Made by a program: the position numbers and the translations under genes. A stretch of DNA of 64,000 bases from Mobula hypostoma. Lineage: Eukaryota. Each line of letters opens with the position of its first letter. Positions within the stretch are counted from its first letter, which is position 1. Shown here piece after piece: positions 4,242 through 58,591 of the stretch. The notes beneath the pieces are model-generated. The model did no database searches and was not told where the DNA came from. It saw nothing but the letters and a program-made list of their open reading frames with translations. The DNA is taken from assembly GCF_963921235.1 (NCBI RefSeq), contig NC_086100.1, positions 48,546,001-48,610,000 on the forward strand, given 5' to 3'.

Positions 4242-4336
4242 CTTGATGAAGGGACTCAGCCCGAAACTCTGACTGTCTATACTTTTCCATGGATGCTGCC
4301 TGACCTACTAAGTTCCTCTAGTATATTGTGTGTGTT
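4242..4336 (+). mobile_element. PLE-terminus short element with degenerate hammerhead motif
   Basis: TCTTGATGAAGGGACTCAGCCCGAAACTCTGACTGT...GATGCTGCCTGACCTAC...TGTGTGTG matches the family seen at 47836-47988; core has C>T (TTGATGA). Confidence 0.8.
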
Positions 4337-4699
4337 ACCCAAGACAAGCAATACTTCTTTGGTCTCTCCCCTCCCTAATTCTGCTATATCCAACCCTTTT
4401 ACCCTACAGTCATCTAAGGACTCTGAGGATTTTACCATCTGCATTTAAAAATTGACACCATCATTGTTGATTTTGTTTCGGGCTGTATAGGCTTTATGTT
4501 TGGTAGATCCCTCCGAAAGCCTCACAGTCTTGTTATCAGATTCTACTGGCAAATGTTCCTGTGAAATACCTTTTACTGTATATATACAGGTTAATCAGCT
4601 GTTTTGGTGAATATTTGTTACCTGGATTGATCCTTGAATTAAAAATCACTGAGAAGTAGACACTGTTCAAACATTTCCTTCAATTCAATTGATTGTGCT

Positions 4700-5200
4700 A
4701 ATTGTGCTCAATATTACTTACCTAGCTCTGATCCACTCTCCTGATAACCTTACCTAATAAAAATCTATCTGTCTTGGTCTTGAAATTTTGGTTGTCTGAG
4801 AATTCACTGTCATTTCAAGGACGTAATTCCACATTTTCTTTGCCCTCGCTTTGAATATATGCTTCCTCATTCAATTCTGAATAGACTTGTTCTGATTTTA
4901 ATATTGTACCCTTCTGTCTTGGAATTTCCCATCAGAGGAAATAGCTTCTCTGTGTCAACTGTAATAAATTTGTGGCACTTTTTAAACATCTCAATCACAA
5001 CATCTTTTAATCTTCTACCCTAATGATCACACCCCAGAGTGTACAACATGTCTTCATAATTCTACCCTTTAAGGCCTGCTCCCTTTCAAGAATACCTTCC
5101 ATTTACCCAGCTCAACACTAACATCTTTTTTCTGAAACTTAGTATACAGACTGAACACAATATTCCACATAAGATGTTTTGAAACTCTGTATAATTTGTT
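4700..5200 (-). mobile_element. Old CR1-like LINE 3' fragment
   Basis: Degenerate similarity by eye to the CR1 3' ends at 8400-8660 and 38600-39000 (aatctatc...aattccacatttt...gcttcctcat...ggaaatagcttctc). Confidence 0.5.
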
Positions 5201-5929
5201 CTCCATTATATGCAAAGGTTCTTAAACTAATTCAATGCTTTTGTTGCATTCTTGCCATCATTTAGTGATGGTAGAATATGTGACCAAAATTTTTTTCTTT
5301 CATTTTGTAGATTCTCATTAAAAAAGATACTGAAATTCGTCTGTTTCAATTTGTCAAATAATTCTGTGATGATAAACTGTGCAAAGACTGTTGTTCTGAC
5401 ATAAGATTTATCAACCAAACATCCACTGAAGAGTTTAACATTTATTACTGCCCTGAGTCTCCAAGTATCAAGCTCAGTTATAAAGTCCTTTGTATGAAAC
5501 ATTGCAAATATCTTTTGGAAGATACTTTGGACATTGGCAGTACTTACTTAAAGATTCGAAGCACATTTATTATCAAAGAACGTATAAATTATACACCTTG
5601 AAATTTGTCTGCTTACAGGCAGCCACAAAGTAAGAAACCCAAATAACCCAATTTTAAAAAGACCAAAATCCACTGTGCAGAGAAAGACAGAGAGAGAAAA
5701 AAATACACATCATGCAACCAAAACAAGCAAGCCAACAGCATTCTGAACCAGACTGAGTCCCAGATGTGTTCCTGGAGTAGGCCCAAGCCTCGTTCCCCAG
5801 TTCATCCCACTAGCGAGGCAGAAACGCACGGCAGCCAGGTCAGTTCACAGCCTCAGCACTGCGGAGGAAGAGATAAACATTCACAGGAGAGCGAGCTAAT
5901 TCGGCCCGACCCTCACCTCTGTACCAGAC

Positions 5930-6063
5930 ACAAACACGAGGAATTCTGCAGATGCTGGAAATTGAAGTTACACACATCAAAGTTGCTGGTGAATGCAGCA
6001 GGCCAGGCAGCATCTCTAGGAAGAGGTACAGTCGACGTTTCGGGCCGAGGCCCTTCGTCAGGA
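5930..6063 (-). mobile_element. 134-bp PLE-terminus short element with hammerhead, 12-bp TSD
   Basis: Perfect TSD TCTGTACCAGAC at 5918-5929 and 6064-6075; minus strand reads TC-CTGACGA-AGGGCCTCGGCCC-GAAA-CGTC-GACTGTACC...GATGCTGCCTGGCCTGCTG...CCAGCATCTGCAGAATTCC. Confidence 0.92.
6027..6063 (-). ncRNA. Minimal type I hammerhead ribozyme motif
   Basis: CUGACGA, stem II GGGCC-UC-GGCCC, GAAA, CGUC cleavage site; the 5' strand of stem I is mostly lost and could be supplied by flanking UACAG pairing with CUGUA. Confidence 0.8.
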
Positions 6064-7529
6064 TCTGTACCAGACGCTGGGTTTTCCAGTGTATCGGTGT
6101 CAACATTTAAATTGTCCAAGCACCGTAGTGCCATGCGCCAGGACCCGGTCATCAGCTTAATACGTATTCAAGGCATTTTGCAGGCAGTCCTGAGATCAGA
6201 AAGCACTGGTATTACAATCCAGGGCGTAATGATCCATCATTGTTCTCAAGAGTGGATTTAGCGGATGATGATGGAGCTCCAGGTTTCAGCAGAAGGTTTT
6301 GCATTAGAGCTCATCAGTACTGAATGGGAGCAAGGGCAATCAGACTTGTATGGTGGAATACTGTTTAAAGTTTGGACCGAAAGTTCATAAGTCGGAAATG
6401 TGGTCATCACCTGAGTTCCTGAATGGCAAAAGATGTCTGCAGCCCTGCTGTAATCAGCATCTCCATACTGACAGTCACCTAAGCCAACATAAGTTGGGCA
6501 TTCACAAACTTGGAAGGACCTGTAGTCCATTCCTCGGATCCCCTCCAATCCAAAGCACATCTTTACTGCACTCATATCTGGTTAAGTAAGATGATAATGT
6601 GGGAATTTTAAAGGAAGACCTATTAATATGTATATTGGACATTAATCCTGCACATGTCAACCAAACTACGCTTATTTCAGAAGGCATCTAGAAAAAGCAG
6701 TAAACTTATATTTTAAAAAATTGTATTTTATGATTGTGTAAATTAACATAGTCTTTGCATAAATCAGATTAATCTGCGTACTTTTACTAATGGTAAAATA
6801 ATATAATACCCTGTATGATTCTAGTCAGAAAATTTCATTCAAGTTAGAATGGCATAATGTATAAAGCAAATTCATTGTTTAGAGGCTCAGTTAACTCATT
6901 TTTCCTAAGGGGAGAAAGAGAGAGAGGCAAACACAGAAAAGGAAAAGTCTGACTACTTGCTCATCACCAAATTGTGTTGAAGACTGATTGCCAGTAGTAA
7001 TTAAAATGAACTCCCCCTCCCATTCTATAGTGTGTGAACTATATCTGTTACATAGTTTGGCTAATTCATGGTTTTGAATAAACACCGCTCTAGTATTAAA
7101 CGTTTGTTAATATCTTCATCATTTTCCAGTGTTTCAAAACTGAAGTAATCTAGGTAGAAATAAGGTCTTTTGATGCCTCATTCAACTGTCATAAAACTTG
7201 TGTACCAGTGAAACTTACTCTTTTTGCATCACTTTCATCACATAAAGTCAAGTTTTCTTTTAACGCAGAGGTAAACTTTTCAGAATGTTGCAGCCTCCTC
7301 ACTCAAACCACCTGATCCCTTTCTGCATCCTTAGATAATTTACACTGTATACCCTGTCTGTATAATTCTAGTTTGAGGGGTTTTAAATGAAAATTTTGCT
7401 GTTTTTTCATTTATATATATACAAGAGGGGTTATAACTTTTTGAACCACTGCAATCCATGTGCTAAGACTGTTCCCACTGTTTTTTAATGTAAAGATTTC
7501 AAGGAGTTGAAAAGTAGTGCAGCAACCAG

Positions 7530-7760
7530 TTGTCTCCCCTTAGAACCTGAGACTGCCCCTGACCTCGGGTGCTGTTCGTGTGCCTGTTCTCTCTGTGAGC
7601 TTCTGAGTTTCCACCTGGTACTCTTGCTTCTTCCCACATCCTATGGATGTTCCAGTGGATTAATTGGCTACTGTAAATTACACCTTAGTAAAGGAGAGAG
7701 AATGGAGGCCTATGAGAGGATAAGATGCAGAGGGGCAAGGGTATTAGGACAGATAGGATT
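7530..7760 (+). mobile_element. Old SINE fragment (V-domain-like core)
   Basis: Motif cttcccacatcc...ttaattggctactgtaaattacaccttagt; a related copy lies at about 21660-21940. Confidence 0.45.
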
Positions 7761-8660
7761 GTTCTACTGGGAGACAACTTTTGAGGAGGTGGAGATTGAG
7801 CATTGCTGCAAAAGAACAATGATTAGGACTCTCTGCAGCCAAGTACAGTGTTCAGGCTAGGATGTAAATGGCAGGTCAAATCAAGATACTCTTGATGTGA
7901 ATGTTGCTGATCTTCTCAAGAAAATTTTACGGCTGCCTCCATCCAGTTAAATGGGGAACATTCTATCACGTTCGTGGCATCTAGCTTGAATGCAGAGACA
8001 CTTGAGAAGGAGAAAGAGGAATTCCCAATTGGCTAAAAATTCAGTGCAATGCCTTTAGAGGTCCATTGGCCACAGCTCACAATATTCTGAAGCAGAGCTG
8101 GTAAAGTCAGAGGAGACGTGGTTTCAGAGCAAAGACTGGCTGACTAAAATTTGTGTAAAGATGGAACAAGTGATAGCAGCATTGGTTATGCAACAATTGA
8201 GCTTGTGTGTCTACTGTAATATGGAAAAGGCTGATGTTGCCTTTCTTCTGTTCTCCTGTAAATCTTTCACATAATGCCTCTGTTATTCCACAGAGTAAGA
8301 GGATCCATGTTGTCCCAATCAAAAACAAAACTCAGTAGTTTGCACCTGCATCTACTTAAGGCTGACTGGTGAGTATTCATGATTTATCAGTAATTCTCTG
8401 TAAGACCAGACATAGGAGCAGAATTAGGCCATTCAGCCCAACAAGTTTTATCTGATATTTGATCATGTCTGATTTATTTTCCTTCTCAACTCCATTTTCT
8501 TGCCTTTAACCCATAACCATTGACTTCCTTACTAATCATGAACTTATCAATCTCCACTTAAAATATACCCAATGACTTGTCCTGCATAGCCATTTATGTC
8601 GATGCATTCTACAGATTCACTACCCTCTTGCTGAAGAGAGTCTCCTTATCTCTGTCCTCA

Positions 8661-9160
8661 AACTATGTTGTGTTTAAATTTGGAAAAAGTTAGAAGTGTT
8701 GTTTATGATCCCTCTATTAATTTTGAAAAGACCTGGAGGCCATTTATTCAACATTTTCATATGATGTAATTTGACCTTTTCCAAACTTATTCTATTTCTT
8801 TGTAATATTTGTTGAGAGGAATGGTGTCGTCGACACTAATGCTTTTTTTAATGATGTTATATAACAGCCCATGTCTTTTTTTTTTAGTTTAGTTGATTAA
8901 TACTGTTTAGGTTAGTTTTTTTGGGGGGGGATTTATAGTTTTATTTTTTTCTCTTTCCTTTTTCATGATTTTTTTAGATATTTTTCTTTGTTTTATATTG
9001 TTCATCTGTATCCTCAATGATTGGGAGTTTTAACATTTAAGTGTCAACTGGGTTTATATTTAATTATGTCAATTATAACAATGTATTCCCAATAACTTTG
9101 TATCATTATTATGTTACATTTATTATTATGAAACTATCCAATAAAAGGATTGAAAAAGAT
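8661..9160 (+). mobile_element. L1-clade LINE 3' end (ORF2 C-terminus, 3' UTR, A-rich tail) nested in CR1
   Basis: Translates TMLCLNLEKVRSVVYDPSINFEKTWRPFIQHFH (L1 ORF2 terminal pattern), then a T-rich UTR with a G run and AATAAA near 9140. Confidence 0.75.
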
Positions 9161-10919: not shown

Positions 10920-11052
10920 CCTTTTAAATCTACTCCTCACATGTTTTTCTCCAGTCCTGCCGAAGAGTTTTGGCCTGAAACACCGACTGTACTTTTTTCC
11001 ATGTATGCTGCCTGGCCTGCTGAGTTCCTCCAGCATTTTCTGTGTGTTGCTC
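10920..11052 (+). mobile_element. PLE-terminus element with degenerate hammerhead, nested in CR1
   Basis: CAGTC-CTGCCGA-AGAGTTTTGGCCT-GAAA-CACC-GACTG followed by ATGCTGCCTGGCCTGCTGAGTTCCTCCAGCATTTT. Confidence 0.85.
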
Positions 11053-17627: not shown

Positions 17628-17785
17628 CACACACGAAATTCTGGCAATGCTGGAAATCTTGAGCAAAGCACACAAAATGCGGGAGGAACTCAGCAAGTAG
17701 GACAGTACATTAACTGTTTATTTCCCTCCATGGATGCTGCTTGACTTAACTGAGTTGCTCCAACATTTGATGCACGTGGCTCAAT
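17628..17785. mobile_element. Old fold-back pair of PLE-terminus units
   Basis: Minus-oriented aatgctggaaatcttgagcaaagcacacaaaatgcgggaggaactcagc followed by plus-oriented gatgctgcttgac...ctgagttgctccaacattt. Confidence 0.75.
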
Positions 17786-23809: not shown

Positions 23810-23990
23810 ACACACATAAAAGTTGCTGGTGAACGCAGCAGGCCAGGCAGCATCTCTAGGAAGAGGTGCAGTCGACGTTTCAGGCTGAGACCCTTGGGGT
23901 CTTCCCAGAGATGCTGCCTGGCCTGCTGCGTTCACCAGCAACATTTATGTGCGTTGCTTGAATTTCCAGCATCTGCAGAATTCCTGTTGT
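23810..23990. mobile_element. Fold-back (tails-out) PLE-terminus insertion, 15-bp TSD, nested in RTE
   Basis: Perfect TSD TTTCATTTTTTAGAA at 23795-23809 and 23991-24005; left unit minus (truncated at hammerhead stem II), right unit plus. Confidence 0.92.
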
Positions 23991-24769
23991 TTTCATTTTT
24001 TAGAAGTTGGTTTTGGCAATGGCAATTCTTCTTTTTATTTCTACTTCACTTCTAGCATCTTGTGATATAAAGCTACCAAGGTAATTAAAGCTGGTCTTTT
24101 GTTCAATCTCTGGTTACCGATGTACAATTGGCAGTTGGGAGTATCCTGCTGTTTTGATATTACCATAGATTTGTTTTTTTTTACAGTTGACGGTTAGACC
24201 AAAATCTGCACTTGTTTGTACTACTTTGTCTAGGAGGATTTGTAGGTCTCCTGCAGCACTTGCTATTAGGGTGGTATCGTCTGCATATCTTATATTGTTG
24301 ATGTTAACACCATCAATTTTTATCCCATCTAGGTCTTCTATTTCTCTGAGAATCATTTCACTATAGATATTAAATAACTCTGGTGAGGCAATGCATCCCT
24401 GTCTAACTCCTCTTTGAATTTTAGTCCAACTGCTTATATTATCATCAACTTTTACTGCCGCTGTTTGATTCCAGTATAAATTTGGAAGCAGTTGTTGGTC
24501 CCTTCCATCAATGTTTAGTTTAGCGATAATTTGAAATAATTTTTCATGTTGCACTTTGTCAAATGCTTTAGTGAAATCAATAAAACATAAAAAGACTCAT
24601 TCTGATATTTAATTGCCCTTTCTGAAAGCATTCGTAGTATGAAAATTGCGTTCCTAGGTCCTCTATCCTCAATAAACCCGTATTGCAGTTTAGAAGTTTC
24701 TGGACTCAACTTGTTTTTAATTCGACTCAGAAAAAACTCTCAATAAAATCTTTACTATGTGACTCATAA

Positions 24770-24906
24770 GTCCTGACGAAGGGTCTCAGCCTGAAACGTC
24801 GATTGCACCTCTTCCTAGAGATGCTGCCTGGCCTCCTGCGTTCACCAGCAACTTTTATGTGTGTTGCTTGAATTTCCAGCATCTGCAGAATTCCTGTTGT
24901 TTGCGT
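24770..24906 (+). mobile_element. PLE-terminus short element with hammerhead, at the RTE inversion junction
   Basis: GTC-CTGACGA-AGGGTCTCAGCCT-GAAA-CGTC-GATT...CCAGCATCTGCAGAATTCCTGTTGTTTGCG; no TSD visible. Confidence 0.9.
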
Positions 24907-29120: not shown

Positions 29121-29146
29121 CTTTTATATCTCCCTTCTTAAATCAA

Positions 29147-31532: not shown

Positions 31533-33852
31533 GGTGACATGAACATCGATTCACCATTTCCCAACCCCTTTTCCCTCTCTCACCTTATCTCCTTGCCTGC
31601 CCATCGCCTCCGTCTTGCACTCCTCCGCCCCCCTTTTCTTTCTTCCATGGCCTTCAGTCCTTTCCTATCAGATTCCCCCTTCTCAGGGGGGCATCAAGTG
31701 ATGACGTGGGATTGAGACGTGTAAATCCAGCTCTCCCGTAAAAAATCAGTAAAGTACCGTTTAAACAACGTAAAGTTAATGAATACTTTCCGAAAACTAC
31801 TTATAAACTTCGTAAGACTACTCTACGATATGCCTCGTAACCCACAACAGAAGAAATCTGTTGTTGTGAAGTCGCAGCGAGATGGGAAGAAAAAAGGGCC
31901 CACTGCAGCGATGGAGCCTCGAATTCAGCTTGGATCTCCTTCGGAGGAGATGCGCTCTATCTCCGCTGGAGAACAGGGAGCAATGGCGGCCATAGCGGTC
32001 TCTCGGAAGAAGGTGCCGGAAATGCGCATGCGCAAATTGACACAACTTAAACTACAAGAACCAACGGCCACTGCAAGTGAAAGTGACTCAGAGTCAGAAT
32101 CGGATACCGCAGAGAATACAGATGAAGGAGAGGAGGAAGAACTGGAAGAGACTGGAAGTAAAGGAGACGACGGAGACATAAGACAGGCTTTATTGCAATT
32201 AACGGCTGAAATAAGAAAATTAAGAACAGAACTTAGAAGGGGGAATCTGATAGCTATGATAAAGCTATGAAAAGACAGGATAAAATGGATAAGAAACTTC
32301 AGAAGATGGAAAGAACAATGGAGCATATTAACGATAGAGTGGAAAAAACAGAAAATAATGTGCTCGTCTGGAACACGGAAAGAAATCGACTCTTGGAAAA
32401 AGTGGACGTGTTGGAAAATTTTAGTTGGTCTTAAAGAAGGTATAGAGGGAGATAATCCAATAGAATTTTTTCAAAGATGGAACCCGAAAACCTTGCAAAT
32501 GAAAGAGGAAGACTGATCAATTGAAATTGAGCGGGCACATAGAGCTCTAAGACCAAAACCACAAGATGACCAATATCCACGATCAATTTTAATAAAATTC
32601 TTAAGATTTCAAGACAAAGAAAGGATTCTACGGGTGGCTGCCCAAGCTGCCAAGAAGAGAAAAGGGCCACTGATGATAGAAAGGAAGAAAATTTTTTTCT
32701 ACCCTGACATAAGTTATGAACTTTTGAAGAAAAGGAAGAAATTTAATCCAGTGAAAAAAGCCCTATGGGATCACAGTTATCAATTTATATTGCGTTATCC
32801 TGCAGCCTTGAAGATTTTTTTGACCGGTGGAGAAAAAAGATTTTTTGATGATTACCGGAAAGCGGAGGAGTTTGTGCGAGATTCTTTGAATATTCACAAG
32901 AACAAACCCAGGGGAGTGAGATGGATTGAAGATGAAGACTGGATTAAGGAATAGGCCTGTTGGATTTTTAGGCAGATGAATATATAAATATATTATTAGT
33001 TATATGAGGGAGGGGAAGAAAGGTTAAAATTTGAGGAATACTAGCTGGGAATAATGACATTAATTTCTCTTTTATATATATACAATTTTTTGTTACGGGG
33101 GAGCTGGAAGAAACACTGACCAATTGCTACGTTATTCATGTGTGCAAACGTGGCAATAGCCACGACCCGCAGAATGGAGGGGGGTAGTGTTGTGTATCTT
33201 TTCATTCACAACATTAGTGGGGGGGTATTTTGTTTTTTCTTTTTTTGTATCTCATCTCTTTTTTTTTGCCTGGATGATTGAGAGGGAAACACATAGCAAC
33301 ATGGTGAATTTCAAAGAGATTCCCCAGGGAACTATGAGAGTTGAGAAGCTAAGTAATGTTTTAGATATGATAAAGATCTTGGTTCCTTGGGGAAAGTAAC
33401 AAATATATAGTACACTTATTTTTAATCCCATGGAGCATGTGGAAACCTTCCAATATTCAGGCGGTCCTTTTTTTTCTCTTTTTTTTCTTTTCTCTTTAGG
33501 TAGTAGTATATATCGGGGGGGAGGGTTAAGGGGAGGGGGGAGGGTATGTATTTTTTTCTTGTATTTACTTTGAAAACTCAGTAAAAATTATGTTAAAAAA
33601 AAGATTCCCCCTTCTCCATCCCTGTATCCTTTTCACCAATCAACTTCCCAGCTCGTTACTTCACCCCTCTCCATCCCAGTTTCACCTATCACTTTGAGTT
33701 TCTCTCTCCTCTTGCCCCATCCTTTTAAATCTACCTCTTATCTTTTTTCTCCAGTCCTGCTGAAGGGTCTCAGCCAAAAACATCGACTGTACTTATTTCC
33801 ATAGATGCTGCCTGGCCAGCTGAGTTCCTCCAGCATTTTGTGTGTGTTGGTT
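31533..33852 (+). mobile_element. PLE 3' end (31533-31684 plus 33602-33852) split by the L1 derivative
   Basis: Both halves are colinear with 37360-37770 (catgaacatcgatt...tcagattcccccttctc | ...cagtcctgctgaagggtctcagccaaaaacatcgactgt...gatgctgcctggcc); hammerhead core mutated. Confidence 0.88.
31685..33601 (+). mobile_element. ORF1-only L1 derivative (HAL1-like), 15-bp TSD, poly(A)
   Basis: Perfect TSD AGATTCCCCCTTCTC (31670-31684, 33602-33616); G-run 5' end; ORF1 from ATG at 31830 to about 32954 with frameshifts (acidic tract, coiled coil, IERAHRAL, PRSILIKFL, IFFYPDISYELLKKRKKF...LRYPAALKI); no endonuclease or RT recognised; G-rich 3' UTR and A tail. Confidence 0.88.
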
Positions 33853-34369
33853 GAGGTCCCCATGTATGATTTGAAATGTGTCAGGATGGATTATTTCTTG
33901 TTTGGAGATGGCATCATGCAGTACCTCAAGGTCTTGATTATAGTTGACCACTGGTGGCATGTATACTCTGGACAGGACTATGGAGAATAACTCTCGAGGC
34001 AAATAGAACAGATGGTATTTGACTGTTAGGTGTTCAAGGTAAGGAACACGATTTTGACAAATCCTCAAATTCAGAGCACCACCATCATGAAACACACTCC
34101 TCCACCTTTTCCCTTTTCCAAATGAGCAGTTTGATCCTTGCTGTAAATCGAGAAGCCTTCAGGTCTAATCACTGTATCTGGCGTGATCGCTGAATTTTGT
34201 ATTTATTGTAGCTGATTTTTTTTTTGTCTTGTACTGTACTGCTGCCATAGGACAACAAAATTCGTGACATATGTCTATGATAATAAACCTGAATCTGATT
34301 CATATAAGTGTTATCAACCAAAAATTTAATTCCATGTCATATTATAGGTTGTTGATTTTAAGGAATGAG

Positions 34370-35850: not shown

Positions 35851-36789
35851 TATGATCATTTCAAGGAAATTAAATTGGTAAAGGAAATATAAAATTTTAG
35901 AGCTAAACAACAAAACATACAACTTTCAATTGTGGAACAGTGAAAATCAGGGATTCTTAAGAAGTTGGAATTGGATGAACACAAAAAAACTGAGAGCATT
36001 GTTGGACCTGCTGAGGTTAAACAGATAGGGACACAATGCAATTAAGAAATATTAACTCATCAAGTGAGGATTTTAAAATCGAGTGTTCAAAATACATTGT
36101 AAAAGTTATTTCAATAGTTTTTTTTTGTTTTAGATACCATAGATACCAAAGTAGTCCCAATGTAGCAACCAATACATATGTACATTTATAGTGTGAGCTT
36201 CAGTGGCTATCACATTGGCAAAGACATCACCAACAAACGAATGAAGAGTCGGCAGATAATGATTTAAGTGAATGTGTATTTCTGATACATCTTAAAGCTT
36301 CCGAACTGGAACCCCATGCTGCTTCTACCACCTTTGCTGAACTTGTCACAGATGAATATTCATGCTGCAGAAACAACAACCATCCCCACGAGCCCTATTG
36401 AAAGAGATTATCAACTACTTGCAGGTTGGTGGCTGGATGATATTTACTGGCGGGTTGCTACATTTTACAAAGTATCACATTTTCATGAGTTAATTAACGT
36501 TTATCAATTGTACAGGCCTGAAGGCAAGAAGTGAAAGATTGCCCTAATTTCAAGACTACTACACAATTTAGTTGCTCTAGGTAATAGGCACATAATTACA
36601 ACATGAAAGGGGAAATAAGTATTAAGATGTGAAGAGACCCATAGTGCTGGAGTAGCGAGTGACACCACTATCCACTGTTCAGTTGATTGAATATTGTATT
36701 GCTCAACAACTTGCACCATTTGGCACTTGTGTCCATTATATTTCTAGTCTAATTTGCTGTGGGATCATTGACCCCTTTTTACTATTTCA

Positions 36790-37804
36790 AGCAAGAGAAA
36801 ATCTGCAGATGCTGGAACTCCGAGCAACGCACACAAAATGCTGGAGGAACTCAGCAGGCCAGGCAGCATCTGTGGAAAAGAGAACAGATGACGTTTCGGG
36901 CTGAGATCCTTCATCAGGACTGGAGACAAAAAGAGGAGTAGAGTTAAAAGGTGGGGGCAGGGGAGAGAGAAACACAAGGTGATAGGTGAAACCGGGAGAG
37001 GGAGGGGTGAAGTAAAGAACCGGGAAGTTGATTGGTGAAAGAGACACAGGGCTGGAGAAGGGGGAATCTGATAGGAGAGGATAGAAGGCTGTGGAAGAAA
37101 GAAAAAGTTGGGTGGAACACCAGAGGGAGGCAATGGGCAGGCAAGGAGATAAGGTGAGAGAGGGAAATGGGAATGGGGAATGGTGAAGGAGGGGGGCCGC
37201 TACTGGAAGTTTGAGTAATCGATGTTCATGCCATCAGGTCAGAGGCTACCCAGATGGAATAAAAGGTGTTGTTCCTCCAACCTAAGTGTGGCCTCATCAT
37301 GGGAGTGGAGGAGGCTATGGAACAACACCTTTTATTCCATCTGGGTAGCCTCTGACCTGATGGCATGAACATCGATTACTCAAACTTCCAGTAGCGGCCC
37401 CCCTCCTTCACCATTCCCCATTCCCATTTCCCTCTCTCACCTTATCTCCTTGCCTGCCCATTGCCTCCCTCTGGTGTTCCACCCAACTTTTTCTTTCTTC
37501 CACAGCCTTCTATCCTCTCCTATCAGATTCCCCCTTCTCCAGCCCTGTGTCTCTTTCACCAATCAACTTCCCGGTTCTTTACTTCACCCCTCCCTCTCCC
37601 GGTTTCACCTATCACCTTGTGTTTCTCTCTCCCCTGCCCCCACCTTTTAACTCTACTCCTCTTTTTGTCTCCAGTCCTGATGAAGGATCTCAGCCCGAAA
37701 CGTCATCTGTTCTCTTTTCCACAGATGCTGCCTGGCCTGCTGAGTTCCTCCAGCATTTTGTGTGCGTTGCTCGGAGTTCCAGCATCTGCAGATTTTCTCT
37801 TGCT
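36790..37804. repeat. Long inverted repeat: 486-bp arms (36790-37275, 37319-37804), 43-nt spacer
   Basis: Mirror positions sum to 74594 at both ends; mirrored ORF translations match in three frames; no mismatch found by eye. Confidence 0.97.
37672..37709 (+). ncRNA. Minimal hammerhead ribozyme motif (mirror copy on minus strand at 36885-36922)
   Basis: CAGTC-CTGATGA-AGGATCTCAGCCC-GAAA-CGTC-ATCTG; catalytic boxes intact, stems I and II weakened by substitutions. Confidence 0.7.
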
Positions 37805-38401
37805 ATCGGAATGGGAATAGGAAGTGGAATAAAAATGGGTGGCCACTGGGAGATCCCACGTTTTCTGACAGATAGAGTGTAGGTGCTCGGTGAAGTAGTT
37901 TCCCATTCCATGCCAAGCCTCACCAGTTTTCAGGAGACCACACCGGGAGCACCGAACACAGTATATGGCCCCCAACAGACTCACATATGAAGTGTTGCCT
38001 CTCCTGGAAAGACTGTTTGAGGCCCTGAATGGTAGTGAGGGAGGAGGTGTCGGGGCAGGTGTAGCACTTGTTCTGCTTGCAAGGATAAGTGCCAGAAGGG
38101 AGATCAGTGGGGAGGGACAAATGGACAAGGGAGTCGTGTAGGGAGTGATCCCTGTGGAAAGCAAAGTGAGGGGGAGGGAAAGATATGCTTGGTGGTTGGG
38201 ATACTGTTGGACATGGCATTACTATTTCTCTGTTTGCAAGCAAGTCTAACCTGCATAACACAGCGCGCAGTAATTGAAGTGGTAATGGACATAATCCTCA
38301 TTCATCTATTGATACCCTACGTATCAATGTAATATTCTGCATCATCACATTTTAATATCATAACATAATAAAAAGGTGGAGCCTGAGCTGTGTCACAGCA
38401 C

Positions 38402-40960
38402 CATAAGATATAGGAGTAGAATTAGGCCATTCAGCCCATCAATTCTGTTCCAACATTTTAACATGGCTGATTTATTTTCCTCCAACACACATAAGAATTG
38501 CTGGTGAACACAACAGGTCAGGCAGCATCTACAGGAAGAGGTACAATTGATGTTTCGGGCCGAGACCCTTCGTCAGGACTTATTTTCCTTCTCAATGCCA
38601 CTCTCTCCTGTCTTCTCGCCACAGCCTTTAATGCCTTACTATTCAAGAACCTATCAACCTCTGCTTTAAATACACCCAATGACTTGGCCTCCACAGTCAC
38701 CTGTGGCAACTAATTCCACTGATTCACCACCCTCTGGTTAACGAATTTTGTCCTCATCTCTGTTCTAAGGAAGCAGGGAGTATTCTTGTATGCTTTTATT
38801 CTGAGGTTGTGCCCTCTGGTCCTAGATTCTCCCATTTGTGGAAACATCTTCTCCATATGCACTCTATCTAGGCCTTTCAATACTCGGTCAGTTTCAAATA
38901 ATCCTTTCACTCCCAGGATCATTCTTGTGAACCTCCTCTGGAACCTCTCTAATGCCAGCGCATTTTTCCTTACATAAGGGGCCTAAAACTGCTCATAATA
39001 CTCCAAATGTGGTCTAATCAATGCCGTATAATGTCTCAGCATTACATCATTGCTTTTCTATCCTAGTCCTCTCGAAACAAACCCTAACATTTCATTTGCC
39101 TTTGATACTGACTCAACCTCGAAGTTAACATTGAGGGAATCTTGCACTTGGACTCCCAAGTCCCTTTGTACCTCTGATCTTTGAATTTTCTCCCTGTTTA
39201 GAAAATAGTCTACAGCTTTATTCCTCTATGAAAGTGTATGTCCATACATTTCCCTACATTTTTAATAATGGATTCATTATCAAGAATATCGTTTTGGGTA
39301 CTTGTAGCCATATGATAAAATAGGCCCAAGTCAGCATGGTTTCATTAAGGTGAAACCTTGCCTGACAAGTCTGTTGGAATTTGAGGATGTAGCAGGCAGG
39401 ATAGACCAAGGAGGGTCAGTGCATGTTGTTTGCTAGGATTTTCAGAAGGCTTTTGACAAGGTGTTGCACATGACACAAAATACGAATGAAGTTCTTCTAC
39501 CACTACTTTGTTCCTCCATTACCACATCTCCAGCACTATTTCCCAGTGACCTGATGTCCATTATTGCCTCTCTGTTACTATGCAGTTCAGATAGAATCGA
39601 ACCAAAAATCACAGTTAGCCAGATCTGTAGGCTTGCAACTCTGCCCAGAAATATTATATATTTCTAACATGATTTGAAAATATTTCACTTTGCCCACACA
39701 TTGCATGACTTAAGACTTTTTTATTCTGTAAGACAGCATTTCCATGTAATTCTACTAATCATCTACAGCATGCAGAGTGTATCCTACATGGTGACCTAAT
39801 AGGGTTTTTAGTTCTCTATTATAGAAAAATAGAGAAAAATAGAAAAATAGAGGGCTATAGGTAACCCTAGGTAATTTCTAAAGTAAGTACATGTTCGGCA
39901 TAGCATTGTGGGCCAAAGGGCCTGTATTGTGCTGTAGGTTTTCTATGTATCTATGTTTCTGTGTATCCATCTGAAAAAAACTTTAAGCATCCTCTTTTAT
40001 ATTATTTGCTAGCTTAGCTTCATATTTCATCATTCCTGTCATTGCTACTTTAGTTGCCTTCGGTTGGTTTTTAAAACCTTCCCAATGTTCTTGCTATCCA
40101 ATAATGTTTGTGATATTGTATGCACTCTCTTTTGCATTTTTGCTGTTTTTGATTTCCCTTGTTAGCCACGGTTCCCTTGTCCTCCCTTTAGAAAACTTCA
40201 TCATCTTTGGTATGAACCAATCCCGTGTCTTGCAAATTACTCCAAGAAACTCCAGCCATTGCTGCTATATTGTCTTCCTAATCAACCTTGGTCAGCTCCT
40301 CTCTCATGTCTTTGTCGTTCCCTTTACTCCACTGTACACTGATACATCCAGGTTTAGCTTCTCCCTCTCGAACTGTAAGGTGAATTCTATCATATAACTT
40401 TATTTGTTGATTGATGGATATACAGTGCAGAATAGCCTCTTCTGGTCCTTCAAGCCTTGCCGCGTGCAAGCCCTGATTTAATCCTAGCCTAATCATGGGA
40501 CAATTTACAATGACCAATTAACCAACCTGTTTACAATGACCAACCTGTATTTCTGTGTACTATACAAGAAAACCTGATCACTAATTTCTAAGGGCTTCTT
40601 CACCTTAAGCTTTTTAATCAAGTCTGGTTCATTACTCAGCACCCAATCCAGAATTGCCTTTAAGACCGCCAGCTGCTCTGAAAAGCTTTCTCATAGACAA
40701 TCTGCAAATTCCTTTCCTTGGAACCCGATTTTCTCAATCTACCTGCAATTTGAAATCCCTCATGCCCATCCTAACATTGCCCTTTTTTATCCCCCATTCT
40801 AATTTGTACCTCACATCCTGGCTACTGTTCAGAAGCTTGTGTATAATTTCCATCAGGGTCTTTTTATACCTGCAGTTTCTCAAAGCTACCCACAAGGATT
40901 CTACATCTTCCGATCCTATTTCCCTACTTTCTGTAAAATAGCAGATAAAATTTAATCTGG
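38402..40960 (-). mobile_element. CR1-clade LINE, fragmented and rearranged (plus-oriented RT piece at about 39270-39470)
   Basis: 3' tail cataagatataggagtagaattaggccattcagccc; LKGLDRVHMEKMFP..GESRTRGHNLRIK; SQHGF and DFQKAFDKV on the plus strand; endonuclease remnant IGSEDVESLWVALRN. Confidence 0.85.
38482..38579 (-). mobile_element. 98-bp PLE-terminus short element with hammerhead, 10-bp TSD
   Basis: TSD TTATTTTCCT at 38472-38481 and 38580-38589; minus strand GTC-CTGACGA-AGGGTCTCGGCCC-GAAA-CATC-AATTG. Confidence 0.88.
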
Positions 40961-46895: not shown

Positions 46896-47029
46896 AAACA
46901 ACAGGAATTCTGCAGATGCTGGAAATTCAAGCAACACACATCAAAGTTGCTGGTGAATGCAGCAGGCCAGGCAGCATCTATAGGAAGAGGCGCAGTCAAC
47001 GTTTCAGGCCGAGACCCTTCGTCAGGACT
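46896..47029 (-). mobile_element. 134-bp PLE-terminus short element with hammerhead, 12-bp TSD (1 mismatch)
   Basis: TSD GAGATGAGGGGC (46884-46895) vs GAGTTGAGGGGC (47030-47041); minus strand AGTC-CTGACGA-AGGGTCTCGGCCT-GAAA-CGTT-GACTG. Confidence 0.9.
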
Positions 47030-47835
47030 GAGTTGAGGGGCCTTCTTTCTGGTAAGCTATTCTAGCCGCTCATTCCAGCACAACAGCCCATCTCACTCTT
47101 TCTGTTCTCCTCCACACCCCAAGGCTAGACGCCAACAGGAGGCTCTGGTGAATACCGATGTAGCAGGCTTCTTCGACCGGACTCTATATGTGCAGCTTGG
47201 ACTCTCTACCATAGAGCATACCTTGTACACCTTCTGCATCATGGTCATTGACGGATGTCTCTTGAGGTTTGGGATGGTCAGAGCATATGTACAACCTGTG
47301 CATATGAGTCTCGGAGAGCACTGCCAGGAGTCCATCCAGTTCCTTCAGATCCAACAACCCAACACTCCTCTCATCTTGGATAACCCCTAATTCTCCACTC
47401 ATGAGCCTTTCTTAGCCTGATCATCCAGCTTACCAATGACCTGCCAGACCACCTGCCAGCAACTTCAGTTGAATTCATCTCGTAAATCTATGGAGACAGA
47501 GGAAGGCCAAGCTCTCACAGGAATACAATAACTTTAGCTGTTGCCTTCAGTACCAGTGAAGCCAGCACCCTGTTGCCTCAAAGACTGCATGACTCTGCGA
47601 TCAAACTCTTCTGGGGCACCACCTCTCTCCAAGGTTGTATGTTCTCCCTCTCCCCCTCCTGAGATCCGAGCCATGAACGACTACATCACTAAAGCGCTAC
47701 GGTATGGCTTCATTCAACCATCCTGGTCCCCAGCTTTTATTCTTCTTTGTCAAAAAGAAAGTTGGGGTCTTTGTCCCCACATCGACTACCATGGACTCAA
47801 CAAAATCTCATTAAGAACTGTTACCCTCTCTTCTT

Positions 47836-47988
47836 ACTAGCTCTTCTTTCAGTTAGTCCTGACGAAGGGTCTTGGCCCGAAACGTCGACTGTACCTCTTC
47901 CTAAAGATGCTGCCTGGCCTGCTGCATTCACCAGCAACTTTTATGTGTGTTGCTTGCAATTCCAGCATCTGCAGATTTCCTCGTGTTC
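47836..47988 (+). mobile_element. 153-bp PLE-terminus short element with hammerhead, 13-bp TSD (1 mismatch)
   Basis: TSD ACCCTCTCTTCTT (47823-47835) vs ACCCTGTCTTCTT (47989-48001); interrupts the Gypsy RT at KNCYPL. Confidence 0.9.
47855..47890 (+). ncRNA. Minimal type I hammerhead ribozyme motif (best-preserved copy)
   Basis: Stem I AGUC/GACU, CUGACGA box, stem II GGGUC-UU-GGCCC, GAAA box, vestigial stem III with palindromic ACGU, GUC triplet; predicted cleavage after C47886. Confidence 0.88.
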
Positions 47989-48251
47989 ACCCTGTCTTCT
48001 TGATGGATAATGCATTCGAAACACTCCACAGAACCCAGATCTTCATCAAACTGCATCTATGGAGCACGTACAACCTGATCCACATCTGCCAGGGAGATGA
48101 GTGGAAGTCAGTATTCATAGCCCCCTCTGGCCACTGCAAATACTTGGTGATGCCATTTGGCTTTCTAACAATCCATCTATTTTCCAAGCTTTCATCAACG
48201 AGATCCTCTGAGACATTCTACAGAAGAATGTGTTTGTCTACCTTGACAACA

Positions 48252-55706: not shown

Positions 55707-55998
55707 GGCGCATGGCCAAGTGGTTAAGGCGTCGGTTTAGTGATCTGAAATTCGCTAGTTCAAGCCTTGGCTGAGGCAGTGTGTTGTGTCCTTGAGCAAG
55801 GCACTTAAAACACACATTGTTCTGCGACGACACTGGCGCCAAGTCCTTCCCTTGGACAACATTGGTGGCATGGAGAGGGGAGACTTACAGCATGGGCAAC
55901 TGCCGGTCTTCCATACAACCTTGCCCAGGCCTACACCCTGGAAACCTTCCAAGGCGCAAATCCATGGTCTCATGAGACTAACGGATGCCTATATATAA
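55707..55998 (+). mobile_element. tRNA-derived SINE
   Basis: A box TGGCCAAGTGG (55713-55723), B box GTTCAAGCC (55758-55766), core gtgtccttgagcaaggcactt, TA-rich tail. Confidence 0.82.
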
Positions 55999-56010
55999 TA
56001 ATTATAAGAA

Positions 56011-56215
56011 GAAGAGAAAATCTGCAGATGCTGGAAATCCAAGCAACACACACAAAATTCCGGAGAAACTCAGCAGGCTAAGCAATATCTATAGAAAAAT
56101 TTAAGTACAGTCGATGTTTCGGGCCTTCCAGGCTTCAGACTGAAACATTGACTGTACTTTTTTCCATAGATGCTGCCTGGCCTGCTGAGTTACTCCAGCA
56201 TACTGTGTGTTTGCA
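56011..56215. mobile_element. Fold-back pair of PLE-terminus units joined within hammerhead stem II
   Basis: Minus unit ends ...gtacagtcgatgtttcgggcc; plus unit starts cagactgaaacattgactgtac...gatgctgcctggcctgctgag. Confidence 0.85.
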
Positions 56216-56862
56216 CAGTTTGTATGAACTTATACTGTTCCTAATAGTTCTTAACTACAGCCCTTCACAGTTAATTAATTCTGGGAAAAAGTTCTATACT
56301 GTATTTCACTTGCAGTCCAAAACAGAGCAGCAACATCAGATACAGAGTAGAAATCGGCCAGATATGAAAGCAGAATGGTAATTATTTGCTAGCTAGATCC
56401 TCTGGCATCACCAGGAATAGGACATTCTTCTTAACGCCTATTAATTTAGAATATCCTTCTGTTTTTAGTCAAAATTAGATATTGTTTTTGTAATTATTGA
56501 GTTGACCTTGTGTATGGTGACTCCTGCTAATCTGCGGCACAAACCTCACTCTTAGAAATCAGATGAACTGGTAAATATGAAATGATGCTGCAAGTTTTGA
56601 AGTTTATGTGGTTTTTAACTAGGTGTTAAAGTGGGTAACCCTAACTAATAATCACAGTAAACAGGCTTGTTCTTATATGAACTATGTCATTGCAGTAAAT
56701 TAGGCTGAAATATCATTTAAAAAATTATTCTTGAAAGAGTAAGAAATCATAATTTAAATCATTAATAATGTCTCATGATGTCACTTTGGATGCTTGGGAA
56801 TCCTGTCTGCAAAATGGAGTTCAGCAGAAGTCACTAATGATGCTTAAAGCATTGGATTAGAT

Positions 56863-58591
56863 CAGGGGTGGCCAACCTTTTACACTCCATGCATCAAATT
56901 TTTTCACGCACGAGTTCTGATGCGCCATACAACTCTTGTACCCCCATTCAATTCTTGTAAAAATATGTTAATACAGACATATTTAGCATTTTTACATGAT
57001 ATATTGATTTAATATAAAAACAAGATAAACATTACTTACACCAGTTTTTTGGCCAACGCTAAAGCAATTTTGTAGGCGGCTTCTGTCATCACCAAAGTTT
57101 CACAACTTCTTTTAACAAATATATTTTTTCTTTTTTTGATTTCTCCCTTTTTCTTAATCATATATTCTTTCTGTAACTCAGACCCAAGCACTAGCTTCAG
57201 TTTTCCTTCTATTTCAGTCTGATGTTGTGTTTTATAGTGTCTATTAAGATTATGTTTTCTATTATGTGAGAAAGTGTGTTCACAAACAATGCACAACGGT
57301 TTTCCTGACGGATCCGCTATAAATAAGAACTCATTTTCCCACTGTTCATTGAATTCACACTTACTATCACTTTCTGCTTTTCTTTTGCACTGTGATGGGT
57401 AACTGAATGTAAAAACAAGGCTTATTTTTTCAAAAAGGTACAAAACTGCAAATGTTCACAAAGGACGAACAAAGCACAACTCCATAGCGCACGAGTGTCA
57501 ATTGTAAACTGACTGGCAAAAACCGGCGATGCACCGCTGGTGCAGACACCTGGCGCCTCAGGATCAAACAGGTATCATACGTGTATTGAACAGTTATGGA
57601 GCGACTGCAGAACAAAAGTCCTTCTTTCGTAGTTTGACTCATTGAACATTTTTTTAAAAATTGAAAACAGATTAATGTGAAAGAGGATAACATTCGCCAA
57701 AAGATGTGCACGAAATAATAAAATCGCTAAAAGTAATTGCTAAGTTTTAGATTTATTCCCAGTAAAACCCATTTCTAACTCTAAGCTCGCAAACCCGTGG
57801 AAATCTGCAGATGCTGGAGATTCAAGCAACACACACAAAATGCTGATGGAACGCAGCAGGCCAGGCAACATCTATAGGAAGAAGTACAGTCGATATTTTG
57901 GGCTGAGACCCTTCATCAGGATTAACTGAAGGAAGAGATAGTAAGAGATTTGAAAGTGGGAGGGGGAGGGAGAGATCCGAAATTATAGGAGAAGACAGGA
58001 GGGGGAGGGATAGAGCTAAAAGCTGGAAACTTGATTGGCAAAAGGGATACAAGGCTGGAGAAGGGAGAGGATCATGGGACAGGAGGCCTAGGGAGAAAGA
58101 AAGGTGGAGGGGAGCACCAGAGGAAGATGGAGAGAAGGCAAGGAGTTATTGTGAGAGGGACAAAGAGAGAAAAAAGAGAGAGAAAGAAAAAAAAAGGAAA
58201 AAATAATAAATAAATAAGGGATGGGGTAAGAAGGGGAGGAGGGGCAATAACGGAAGTTAGGGAAGTCAATGTTCATGCCATCAGGTTGGAGGCTACCCCT
58301 CCCACTTTCAAATCTCTTACTATCTCTTCTTTCAGTTAGTCCTGACGAAGGGTCTCGGCCTGAAACATCGACTGTACCTCTTCCTATAGATGCTGCCTGT
58401 CCTGCTGCATTCCACCAGCATTTTGTGTGTGTTTCTAGCTCTAACCTACTTGAATTCCTGTTATAGATTTTTTTTTCTACAAATCAGTTTTTGTTTAATA
58501 CTTTTTGCATGAGTAGGCTTACTTTTTTATTATTATCACTGGGGTGCAATGCGCCACTTTTGCTGCATGCGCCATAGGTTGGCCATTCCGG
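56863..58591 (-). mobile_element. hAT (Charlie/SPIN-like) DNA transposon, internally deleted
   Basis: TIRs CAGGGGTGGCCAACCT and AGGTTGGCCATTCCGG; 8-bp TSD GATTAGAT / GATTAGAA; N-terminal zinc finger KRK...FNEQWENEFLF...KPLCIVC....NLNRHYKTQH (57036..57443), catalytic domain absent. Confidence 0.9.
57785..58431. mobile_element. Fold-back PLE 3'-end insertion, 13-bp TSD (1 mismatch), nested in hAT
   Basis: TSD TTTCTAACTCTAA (57772-57784) vs TTTCTAGCTCTAA (58432-58444); long minus arm to about 58297 encodes GSLQPDGMNIDF (endonuclease C-terminus); short plus arm has hammerhead AGTC-CTGACGA-AGGGTCTCGGCCT-GAAA-CATC-GACT (58338-58373). Confidence 0.9.

What the first reader, a model, noticed from the sequence alone, without database searches (positions are those of the whole stretch)
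4242..58431. Dense family of hammerhead-bearing short retroelements derived from a Penelope-like element terminus
Seen: about 15 insertions in 64 kb share one module, AGTC-CTGAYGA-AGGGTCTYGGCCC-GAAA-CGTC-GACT plus 60-105 nt (GATGCTGCCTGGCCTGCTG...CCAGCATCTGCAGA). The same module forms the 3' end of elements carrying GIY-YIG remnants (36789-38218, 57785-58297). Established: CUGANGA and GAAA boxes, an NUH triplet and a vestigial stem III with a palindromic loop define the minimal type I hammerheads known from PLE pseudo-LTRs, which are thought to cleave as dimers. Inference: what looks like an ordinary SINE here has no Pol III promoter and is instead a ribozyme-headed, PLE-mobilised unit at very high density. 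PLE hammerheads as such are known; whether this SINE-like short form is described in this lineage cannot be determined from the sequence.
Basis: partly seen in the sequence, partly recalled or inferred. Interest (0 to 1): 0.85.

Follow-up and report, generated by a model that had tools for sequence, protein, structure and literature searches.

The report
Ray Penelope retrotransposon tails with hammerheads
The window is peppered with about 13 insertions of the 3' end of a Penelope-like retrotransposon, each carrying a minimal hammerhead ribozyme motif; this is real and very abundant, but it matches what is already published for these elements in other vertebrates.

Summary
A 19-nt anchor occurs 15 times against 0.01 expected. 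Eleven copies carry AGTC-CTGAYGA-A-stem II-GAAA-ACGU-C-GACT, a minimal type I hammerhead with no stem III loop. About 13 insertion events cover roughly 4.0 kb, 6.3% of the window.

The link to a Penelope-like element (PLE) also holds. One copy (36790-38261, minus strand) runs in frame from a GIY-YIG endonuclease remnant, through a pyrimidine-rich 3' UTR, into the hammerhead and terminal module.

Published PLE insertion behaviour explains every structural oddity:
- heavy 5' truncation;
- an adjacent inverted 5'-truncated copy (five head-to-head pairs here);
- an optional 30-40 bp "tail" (two alternative 3' ends, 37 nt apart);
- variable target-site duplications (TSDs).

Solitary minimal hammerheads were reported in their thousands in 2014 and read as truncated PLEs. 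A 2026 preprint calls PLE-derived hammerhead repeats non-autonomous, SINE-like partners of PLEs. The "SINE-like" reading is therefore only partly supported and not new in kind.

Two points remain unexplained. The 5' ends of four of nine solitary copies cluster at the first base of helix I. A tight short-only subfamily has CUGACGA.

Contigs of four public runs hold thousands of copies. Other windows of this genome were flagged earlier in this scan for the same family.

The parts
47855..47891 (+). Best-preserved minimal hammerhead. Helix I AGUC/GACU, core CUGACGA, bulged A, helix II GGGU-CUUG-GCCC, GAAA, palindromic ACGU in place of stem III. Predicted cleavage after C47886.
47830..47990 (+). 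Solitary tailed copy of the short subfamily, with a 25-nt 5' extension homologous to PLE 3' UTR. Imperfect TSD ACCCT(C/G)TCTTCTT.
46896..47033 (-). Solitary 138-nt tailed copy with 8-bp TSD (TGAGGGGC on the + strand). The 5' end lies 4 nt before AGTCC. Hammerhead intact (GUU triplet).
5930..6063 (-). Solitary 134-nt tailed copy with perfect 12-bp TSD (GTCTGGTACAGA on the element's strand). It starts at TCCTGA, so helix I is cut short.
24769..24903 (+). Solitary 135-nt tailed copy starting at AGTCC. No TSD of 7 nt or more was found. Hammerhead intact with G-U wobbles.
38482..38579 (-). Solitary 98-nt tail-less copy (helix I edge to GTGTGTTG) with 10-bp TSD TTATTTTCCT, inserted next to a LINE 3' end.
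4216..4336 (+). Old tail-less copy with 9-bp TSD ACCCAAGAC. Hammerhead degenerate (TTGATGA, no palindrome).
10920..11052 (+). 133-nt tail-less copy with 33 nt of 3' UTR upstream of the hammerhead. Core broken (CTGCCGA).
31539..33853 (+). PLE 3' copy of about 400 nt (31539-31684 plus 33602-33853), split by a 1.9-kb poly(A)-ended L1-like insertion with 15-bp TSD AGATTCCCCCTTCTC. Tail-less; core broken.
36790..38261 (-). Longest copy. GIY-YIG endonuclease remnant (37805-38164 and upstream), then the end of the ORF (...EEQHLLFHLGSL*PDGMNIDYSNFQ*), a ~350-nt pyrimidine-rich 3' UTR, hammerhead (36885-36922) and tailed end at 36790. It is interrupted by the nested arm 37319-37804.
37319..37804 (+). 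486-nt perfect inverted duplicate of the host copy's own 3' end, nested in its endonuclease coding region 529 nt from the end. No TSD.
23810..23990 (.). Head-to-head (tails-out) pair inserted as one event with 15-bp TSD TTTCATTTTTTAGAA. The left arm is tail-less and the right arm tailed. The joint lies in or next to the hammerhead.
56008..56210 (.). Head-to-head pair. The left arm is tailed and the right arm tail-less. The joint lies inside helix II.
57767..58445 (.). Head-to-head pair: a ~500-nt tailed minus arm (57792-58298, with the last ORF codons) and a ~140-nt tail-less plus arm (58293-58436). Contigs of a host repeat in four runs bridge 57766 to 58446, so everything between is inserted material.
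17635..17782 (.). Old, decayed head-to-head pair of 3' modules without a hammerhead core. One arm is tailed and one tail-less.

Best explanation
These are insertions of the 3'-terminal part of an endonuclease-bearing Penelope-like retrotransposon of a cartilaginous fish. An earlier scan note names a devil ray; I did not verify this.

The hammerhead sits in the element's pseudo-LTR, about 100-135 nt from the 3' end. Every 5'-truncated copy longer than about 100 nt therefore carries it.

Inferred mechanism, taken from published PLE biochemistry:
- The PLE protein binds the 3' module of its RNA.
- It cuts both strands of the target.
- It starts reverse transcription at one of two internal sites. 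This gives tail-less ends at GTGTGTTG and tailed ends 37 nt further on.
- It usually stops long before the 5' end.
- When both cut ends prime, the result is a tails-out inverted pair inside one target-site duplication.

The short 98/134-nt copies are the extreme of this series. A hotspot of 5' ends at the first base of helix I suggests that many derive from a short RNA beginning there. That RNA is most simply a transcript started at an initiator-like YYANWYY site in the pseudo-LTR.

The ribozyme is a conserved passenger of the terminal module. Cleavage is not needed to explain any copy, because none begins at the cleavage site.
For: What the sequence shows:
- The family is real: 15 copies against 0.01 expected.
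- Copies are colinear with a 486/529-nt reference arm, with 5' starts at arm positions 1, 25, 89, 207, 325 and 354-357.
- A GIY-YIG remnant is contiguous and in frame with the ORF end, UTR, hammerhead and tail. The nearest ESM Atlas clusters are eukaryotic GIY-YIG proteins, score 0.94, in 51 of 100 hits.
- There are two 3' ends 37 nt apart, both with TSDs.
- There are five head-to-head pairs. One has a 15-bp TSD around the whole pair. Another is bridged by host-repeat contigs.
- In all four asymmetric pairs exactly one arm is tailed.
- Four of nine solitary 5' ends fall within 7 nt. Under uniform truncation, P is about 0.001 over 500 nt and 0.03 over 160 nt.
- Public-run contigs pile loose ends at 47855, 47832, 46894-6 and 46932, and show 2,500-11,000 matching contigs per run.

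From the literature:
- 5' truncation, an adjacent inverted copy and a 30-40 bp tail at one end (PMC8557442).
- Both strands cleaved and extended, two internal RT start sites that define the tail, hammerhead dispensable for insertion (PMC11167929).
- Minimal hammerheads with a bulged base before helix II and palindromic 15.2-16.2, mostly solitary and 'probably related to truncated PLEs', also as opposite-strand pairs 100-700 bp apart (PMC4209133).
Against: - No PLE reverse transcriptase is linked to any copy in this window. The RT remnants present look like LINEs.
- Pfam does not recognise the endonuclease remnant, and a word-based homologue search found nothing.
- The 5'-end hotspot is not expected from plain random truncation.
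- Loose ends at 47855 and 57921 are confounded by subfamily divergence upstream of the hammerhead. Their consensus is partly pyrimidine-rich UTR, with agreement 0.42-0.48.
- The perfect 486-nt nested arm has no TSD and could be an assembly artefact.
- There is no RNA evidence at all.
Confidence: 0.8

Rival explanations
1. The short subfamily is a self-standing non-autonomous retroelement of 98 or 134 nt. Its members are 5930-6063, 23810-23990, 24769-24903, 38482-38579, 46896-47033 and 47830-47990, with core CUGACGA and tail CACCAGCAAC. It would have its own short transcript beginning at helix I of the hammerhead and would be mobilised in trans by the PLE protein through the shared 3' module: a SINE-like partner. 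This partly overlaps the best explanation.
For: - Four members are 90-94% alike, a fifth is 83-86%, and all are at most 161 nt. Long copies are only 71-80% like them.
- 5' ends cluster within -4 to +2 of the A of AGTCC.
- The three intact hammerheads all belong to this subfamily.
- C7 removes the AUG that the long subfamilies have inside CUGAUGA. C7 predominates among contigs that match this subfamily: 5-12% have T.
- Earlier scan notes report 97-bp and 124-bp units with perfect TSDs elsewhere in the genome (unchecked).
- The concept is published for vertebrates (10.64898/2026.07.22.740005).
Against: - One member extends 25 nt upstream into PLE UTR sequence.
- Contigs continue upstream from 47832 with the same UTR sequence as the 500-nt copy, so a longer source exists.
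- The sample is only seven copies.
- Subfamily assignment of the long contigs could not be made.
- There is no transcript evidence.
- CUGACGA versus CUGAUGA differ by a CpG transition.
Confidence: 0.27
2. The copies are non-LTR retrozyme monomers. In this reading, tandem hammerhead repeats are transcribed, self-cleaved, circularised and reverse-transcribed.
For: A type I hammerhead that would need a partner in tandem to cleave. Retrozymes are reported in one cartilaginous fish (10.64898/2026.07.22.740005).
Against: - There is no tandem array of the unit in 64 kb.
- No copy begins or ends at the cleavage site.
- Copies have fixed 3' ends and TSDs, as in target-primed insertion.
Confidence: 0.05
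3. An ordinary Pol III SINE whose body happens to resemble a hammerhead.
For: Short length, dispersed copies and TSDs.
Against: - No A or B box on the sense strand with up to 2 mismatches.
- No tRNA and no Rfam family.
- The unit is colinear with the 3' end of an endonuclease-bearing element.
Confidence: 0.02

Closest known systems
Minimal hammerheads of metazoan Penelope-like elements (Cervera and de la Pena 2014, PMC4209133)
   Same: CUGANGA and GAAA boxes, an unpaired base between positions 9 and 10.1, a G10.1-C11.1 pair, a short helix I of 4-5 bp, and no loop 3 with palindromic 15.2-16.2 (ACGU). They are mostly solitary copies spread through the genome, some as opposite-strand pairs 100-700 bp apart, and are found in fish, coelacanth, frog and reptiles.
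   Different: Helix II here is 4 bp with a tetraloop, rather than the 6-8 bp described for many PLE motifs. The host is a ray. Density is very high, about one copy per 4-5 kb in this window.
Poseidon PAc of Anolis carolinensis (Frangieh et al. 2024, PMC11167929)
   Same: The hammerhead lies about 100-150 nt upstream of the reverse-transcription start sites. Two start sites define an optional tail. Both target strands are cut and extended. In the long subfamilies an AUG lies inside CUGAUGA, with the cleavage site 25 nt after it (26 in PAc). No insertion begins at the cleavage site.
   Different: Here nothing is shown biochemically. Whether the ray ORF starts at that AUG is unknown: the frame has stops in 6 of 12 copies, and a search with that peptide found no PLE protein.
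General PLE insertion architecture (Craig et al. 2021, PMC8557442)
   Same: A high degree of 5' truncation, an inverted 5'-truncated copy adjacent to the insertion, and a 30-40 bp tail often at only one end.
   Different: No full-length unit or partial tandem (pseudo-LTR pair in direct orientation) is present in this window.
Non-LTR retrozymes and their monomers (Li, Clavereau and Pollet 2026, bioRxiv 10.64898/2026.07.22.740005)
   Same: Short hammerhead-bearing repeats homologous to PLE termini, proposed to be non-autonomous partners of PLEs, with dispersed monomers.
   Different: Retrozymes are defined by tandem arrays. None is seen here, and the copies have target-primed hallmarks.
Schistosoma Sm-alpha hammerhead repeats (cited in PMC4209133; SINE-like nature from my own knowledge)
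   Same: A short, very abundant, hammerhead-bearing repeat in an animal genome that also holds PLEs.
   Different: Sm-alpha carries a canonical hammerhead with loops. The ray unit has the minimal motif and no Pol III boxes.

Membership tests
Penelope-like element (endonuclease-bearing, C-terminal GIY-YIG) | PLE-type reverse transcriptase in the same ORF | tested here: inconclusive
   No copy in the window reaches the RT; the longest is about 1.5 kb. The RVT_1 hits at 66-854, 28643-28918 and 43715-44908 are not linked to any module.
Penelope-like element (endonuclease-bearing, C-terminal GIY-YIG) | C-terminal GIY-YIG endonuclease | tested here: inconclusive
   37805-38164(-) reads AIYCVRCSRCGLL.TGEA...FTEHL...LPVATHF, then ...LEEQHLLFHLGSL.PDGMN. 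ESM Atlas neighbours are eukaryotic GIY-YIG clusters, 0.94. However, Pfam gives no hit, the 39-aa end piece gives none, and the word search gives none.
Penelope-like element (endonuclease-bearing, C-terminal GIY-YIG) | Hammerhead motif in the terminal (pseudo-LTR) region | tested here: met
Penelope-like element (endonuclease-bearing, C-terminal GIY-YIG) | Insertion signature: heavy 5' truncation, adjacent inverted copy, optional 30-40 bp tail, TSDs of variable length | tested here: met
   Truncation series. Five inverted pairs. 37-nt optional tail. TSDs of 8-15 bp.
Minimal type I hammerhead of PLEs | Core boxes CUGANGA and GAAA with an H17 cleavage triplet | tested here: met
   In one search, eight of 11 aligned copies keep CTGAYGA (one has TTGATGA, two have A6 to C) and nine keep GAAA. 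The consensus is GUC.
Minimal type I hammerhead of PLEs | Helices I and II, bulged base before helix II, G10.1-C11.1 | tested here: met
   82.6% of cells pair in register against 9-46% when slid. The bulged A is invariant. The 10.1-11.1 pair is GC in 6 copies and GU in 4. There is no covariation beyond shuffles.
Minimal type I hammerhead of PLEs | No loop 3; palindromic 15.2-16.2 allowing a dimer | tested here: met
   ACGU in 5 of 11 copies. The others differ at the CpG.
Minimal type I hammerhead of PLEs | Self-cleavage (as a dimer or protein-assisted) | not testable with these tools
   Folding alone prefers an inactive extended hairpin: -13.5 against -8.7 kcal/mol for the active stems. Rfam models do not score it.
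SINE (Pol III-transcribed) | tRNA, 7SL or 5S head with A and B boxes | tested here: not met
SINE-like non-autonomous partner of a PLE | Distinct short lineage that shares only the 3' module with the autonomous element | tested here: inconclusive
   A tight short-only subfamily and a 5'-end hotspot. However, one member and many contigs extend into the PLE UTR.
Non-LTR retrozyme | Head-to-tail tandem repeats of the hammerhead unit | tested here: not met
   Tandem Repeats Finder finds no array of the unit. All neighbouring copies are in opposite orientation.

The most novel reading that the evidence does not exclude
The 98/134-nt unit is a true mini-retroelement. In this reading, an initiator-type start site coincides with the first base of hammerhead helix I. 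It produces a short Pol II transcript made only of the ribozyme plus the PLE protein-binding and priming module, which the PLE machinery copies in trans. This would be the smallest PLE-dependent 'SINE', with the hammerhead kept for protein binding or RNA folding rather than for processing. It would have spread to very high copy number in rays.
Probability: 0.22. Interest if true: 0.55.

Novelty: new member of a known kind. Interest (0 to 1): 0.3.

Why it matters
It adds a very abundant ray family to the known set of hammerhead-bearing Penelope-like elements. It also gives clean natural examples of three features that were only recently reconstituted in vitro: the optional tail, priming from both cut strands, and insertion without ribozyme processing.

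For genome annotation, these copies should be labelled as Penelope fragments and not as a new SINE.

The 5'-end hotspot at the ribozyme's first base is a small, testable lead. It bears on where PLE transcripts start and on how non-autonomous derivatives arise.

Tried and rejected
- Rfam, at gathering and at E up to 10, scores no hammerhead. This is expected, because the models need stem III.
- Single-strand folds are no better than shuffles, z from -1.1 to +0.6. The cofold gives a trivial extended duplex.
- Covariation in the hammerhead is not above shuffles, as expected for decaying copies of near-identical sources.
- I tested whether the module is the N-terminus of the PLE ORF, as in Anolis PAc:
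  - The frame from the AUG in CUGAUGA has stops in 6 of 12 copies.
  - A full HMMER search with the 42-aa peptide gave only a low-complexity hit and one predicted protein carrying another frame of the module.
  - The question is left open.
- Pfam on the endonuclease remnant and its pieces gave no hit. The word-based homologue search gave none.
- RNA evidence: no run on record as RNA holds the stretch. The laid runs are contigs of unknown type, so no starts, ends or expression can be read from them.
- A metagenome scan for the 19-nt anchor gave 68 loci, all chance matches without a hammerhead.
- A snap-back origin for the inverted pairs was rejected as a general rule, because the arms are very unequal in three pairs. 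Priming from both cut strands fits better.
- The direct repeat TTTCTA(A/G)CTCTAA around 57767-58445 may be a TSD. The bridging host-repeat contigs lack it, so I do not count it.

Full report
**Observation**

The 19-nt anchor GATGCTGCCTGGCCTGCTG, with up to 3 mismatches, occurs 15 times on both strands between 4292 and 58407. The expected count is 0.01. The hammerhead pattern CTGAYGA-N13-GAAAC gives 29 matches against 10 expected. Thirteen of them lie about 45 nt upstream of an anchor, and eight are exact.

An alignment of 11 hammerhead regions gives the consensus nAGTCCTGACGAAGGGTCTCGGCCCGAAACnTCGACTG. It reads as follows:
- helix I: AGUC/GACU, often 5 bp;
- core: CUGAYGA;
- one unpaired A;
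- helix II: GGGU/GCCC with a tetraloop;
- GAAA;
- ACGU in place of stem III;
- C17;
- the 3' strand of helix I.

The named pairs form in 82.6% of cells, against 9-46% when the partners are slid by 1-3 columns. There is no covariation beyond shuffles.

Rfam does not score the motif. Free-energy folding is not better than shuffles. Both results are expected for a motif without stem III.

Only three copies keep every required feature (47855+, 24769+, 47029-). The others have lost A6, G12, helix I or the palindrome, mostly at CpG sites.

**Anatomy of the copies**

A self-BLAST against the longest clean arm (37319-37804) shows that the copies are colinear 3' fragments of one element. Their 5' starts lie at arm positions 1, 25, 89, 207, 325 and, for five copies, 354-357.

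There are two alternative 3' ends. About half of the copies stop at GTGTGTTG. The others run 37 nt further, to ...CCAGCATCTGCAGAWTTCCTNNTGTTTG. Both kinds have target-site duplications:
- 98-nt tail-less copy 38482-38579: 10 bp;
- 134-nt tailed copy 5930-6063: 12 bp;
- 4216-4336: 9 bp;
- 46896-47033: 8 bp.

Five pairs of copies lie head to head with their 3' ends outward.
- The pair 23810-23990 sits inside a single 15-bp duplication.
- The pair 57767-58445 is skipped as a block by contigs of a host repeat in four public runs.
- In all four asymmetric pairs, exactly one arm has the 37-nt tail.

Altogether about 13 insertion events cover 4.0 kb, 6.3% of the window.

**Link to a Penelope-like element**

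On the minus strand, 37805-38261 encodes a decayed GIY-YIG endonuclease (...GTYPCKQNKCYTCP...AIYCVRCSRCGLL.TGEA...FTEHL...LPVATHFYSTSYSHSD). It continues in frame at 37318 with HSLLHSHDEATLRLEEQHLLFHLGSL*PDGMNIDYSNFQ*. A pyrimidine-rich 3' UTR of about 350 nt follows, then the hammerhead and the tailed end at 36790.

Pfam and a word-based homologue search do not recognise this remnant. The ESM Atlas places it next to eukaryotic GIY-YIG clusters, with a score of 0.94 in 51 of 100 hits.

The 486-nt plus-strand arm 37319-37804 is a perfect inverted copy of this element's own last 486 nt. It is nested exactly between ...SHSD and HSLLH... and has no duplication. It could be a very recent self-targeted insertion, a template switch within one event, or an assembly artefact.

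The copy at 57792-58298 holds only the last codons of the ORF. No PLE reverse transcriptase is linked to any copy here. The RT remnants in the window are not linked to any module and look like LINEs.

**Abundance elsewhere**

No RNA run holds the stretch. Contigs of four runs from two coded organisms and two studies, of unknown library type, give 2,500-11,000 matching contigs per run. The unique flanks have almost no depth.

Loose ends pile up at these positions:
- the full 3' end (46894-6);
- the tail-less end (46932);
- the A of AGTCC (47855), in 60 and 89 contigs with heterogeneous flanks, agreement 0.42-0.44;
- 47832, where the contigs continue with ...CCCTCCCACTTTCAAATC (agreement 0.7). 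This is the same 3' UTR sequence as in the 500-nt copy.

Longer relatives of the 'short' copy therefore exist.

Earlier notes of this scan report the same family in other windows of this genome. They include 97-bp and 124-bp units with perfect duplications, and tails-out palindromes. They name the host as a devil ray. I did not check those notes.

**Comparison with what is published**

*Cervera and de la Pena 2014 (PMC4209133).* They defined this minimal hammerhead in PLE flanking repeats, with these features:
- an unpaired base between positions 9 and 10.1;
- a G10.1-C11.1 pair;
- palindromic 15.2-16.2;
- a short helix I;
- low activity that needs a dimer.

They found thousands of such motifs in coelacanth and Xenopus. 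Most were solitary, 'probably related to truncated PLEs', and some were opposite-strand pairs 100-700 bp apart.

*Craig et al. 2021 (PMC8557442).* They list heavy 5' truncation, an adjacent inverted 5'-truncated copy, and a 30-40 bp tail often at one end only as the PLE insertion signature.

*Frangieh et al. 2024 (PMC11167929).* Working with Poseidon of Anolis, they showed that:
- the protein cuts and extends both strands;
- reverse transcription starts at two internal sites, and the interval between them is the tail;
- the hammerhead needs the protein to cleave;
- cleavage is not needed for insertion;
- no reads start at the cleavage site.

*Li, Clavereau and Pollet 2026 (bioRxiv 10.64898/2026.07.22.740005).* They describe PLE-derived hammerhead repeats, including dispersed monomers and one cartilaginous fish. 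They regard them as non-autonomous partners of PLEs and compare them to SINEs and LINEs.

Each structural feature seen here has its counterpart in these papers.

**What remains unexplained**

First, four of nine solitary 5' ends fall within -4 to +2 of the A of AGTCC. Three of the four are fixed by abutting duplications. Under uniform truncation, the chance is 0.03 over 160 nt, about 0.001 over 500 nt, and lower over longer spans.
- The site fits YYANWYY (TCAGTCC, CCAGTCC, TTAGTCC).
- It also looks like a 3' splice site (pyrimidine tract plus YAG), as noted for the intron end at helix I in Drosophila virilis Penelope (PMC4209133).
- In D. virilis, the mapped start lies in the pseudo-LTR at an initiator-type, TATA-less promoter (PMC2377424).
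- A start site at this position is my preferred reading. It is inference only.

Second, seven copies form a subfamily defined by CUGACGA and CACCAGCAAC. Four of them are 90-94% alike, and all are at most 161 nt. One of them extends 25 nt into the UTR, so the ribozyme is not an obligatory head.

No copy starts at the cleavage site, apart from one arm of the decayed pair at 17635-17782, which starts near it.

**Verdict**

It overstates the case for a distinct ribozyme-headed SINE, and it is not new in kind. I class the family as a new member of a known kind. It carries one modest open lead: the 5'-end hotspot and the short-only subfamily.

Noticed in passing
31685-33601: A 1.9-kb poly(A)-ended insertion with an L1 ORF1 dsRBD-like hit (ORF 32634-32954). 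It splits a PLE 3' copy and is flanked by a perfect 15-bp duplication, AGATTCCCCCTTCTC (31670-31684 and 33602-33616).
   Followed up: partly
36790-37275 / 37319-37804: A perfect 486-nt inverted repeat with a 43-nt spacer. The plus arm is nested in the endonuclease coding region of the minus-strand copy, without a target-site duplication. It is either a very recent event or an assembly artefact. It also produced a spurious MIR2118 'hairpin' hit in Rfam.
   Followed up: partly
17635-17782, 23810-23990, 56008-56210, 57767-58445: In all four asymmetric head-to-head pairs, exactly one arm carries the 37-nt tail. Two of the joints lie in or next to hammerhead helix II.
   Followed up: partly
57700-57766 and 58446-58500: The flanks of the pair belong to another repeat, with depth in the hundreds to thousands. 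Its other copies join 57766 directly to 58446 with one G between, in all four runs.
   Followed up: no
protein P0002: A 192-aa predicted protein from a public genome contains DAAWPAEFLQHFVCV. This is the translation of the module in another frame, so a copy of the module seems to be exonised or read through in a gene model somewhere.
   Followed up: no
66-854, 1383-2168, 28643-28918, 30416-31503(-), 38590-38922(-), 43715-44908(-): LINE remnants not linked to the hammerhead family: RVT_1, zf-RVT, an ALKBH8_N-like stretch, and a typical LINE ORF2 C-terminus.
   Followed up: partly
29146-29348: A tandem array with a 26/78-bp period, 7.8 copies at 92-96% identity, unrelated to the finding.
   Followed up: no
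37679-37804 and equivalents: In the long subfamilies an AUG lies inside CUGAUGA, 25 nt before the cleavage site. This is the same layout as the ORF start of Anolis Poseidon PAc. The short subfamily has ACG there.
   Followed up: partly
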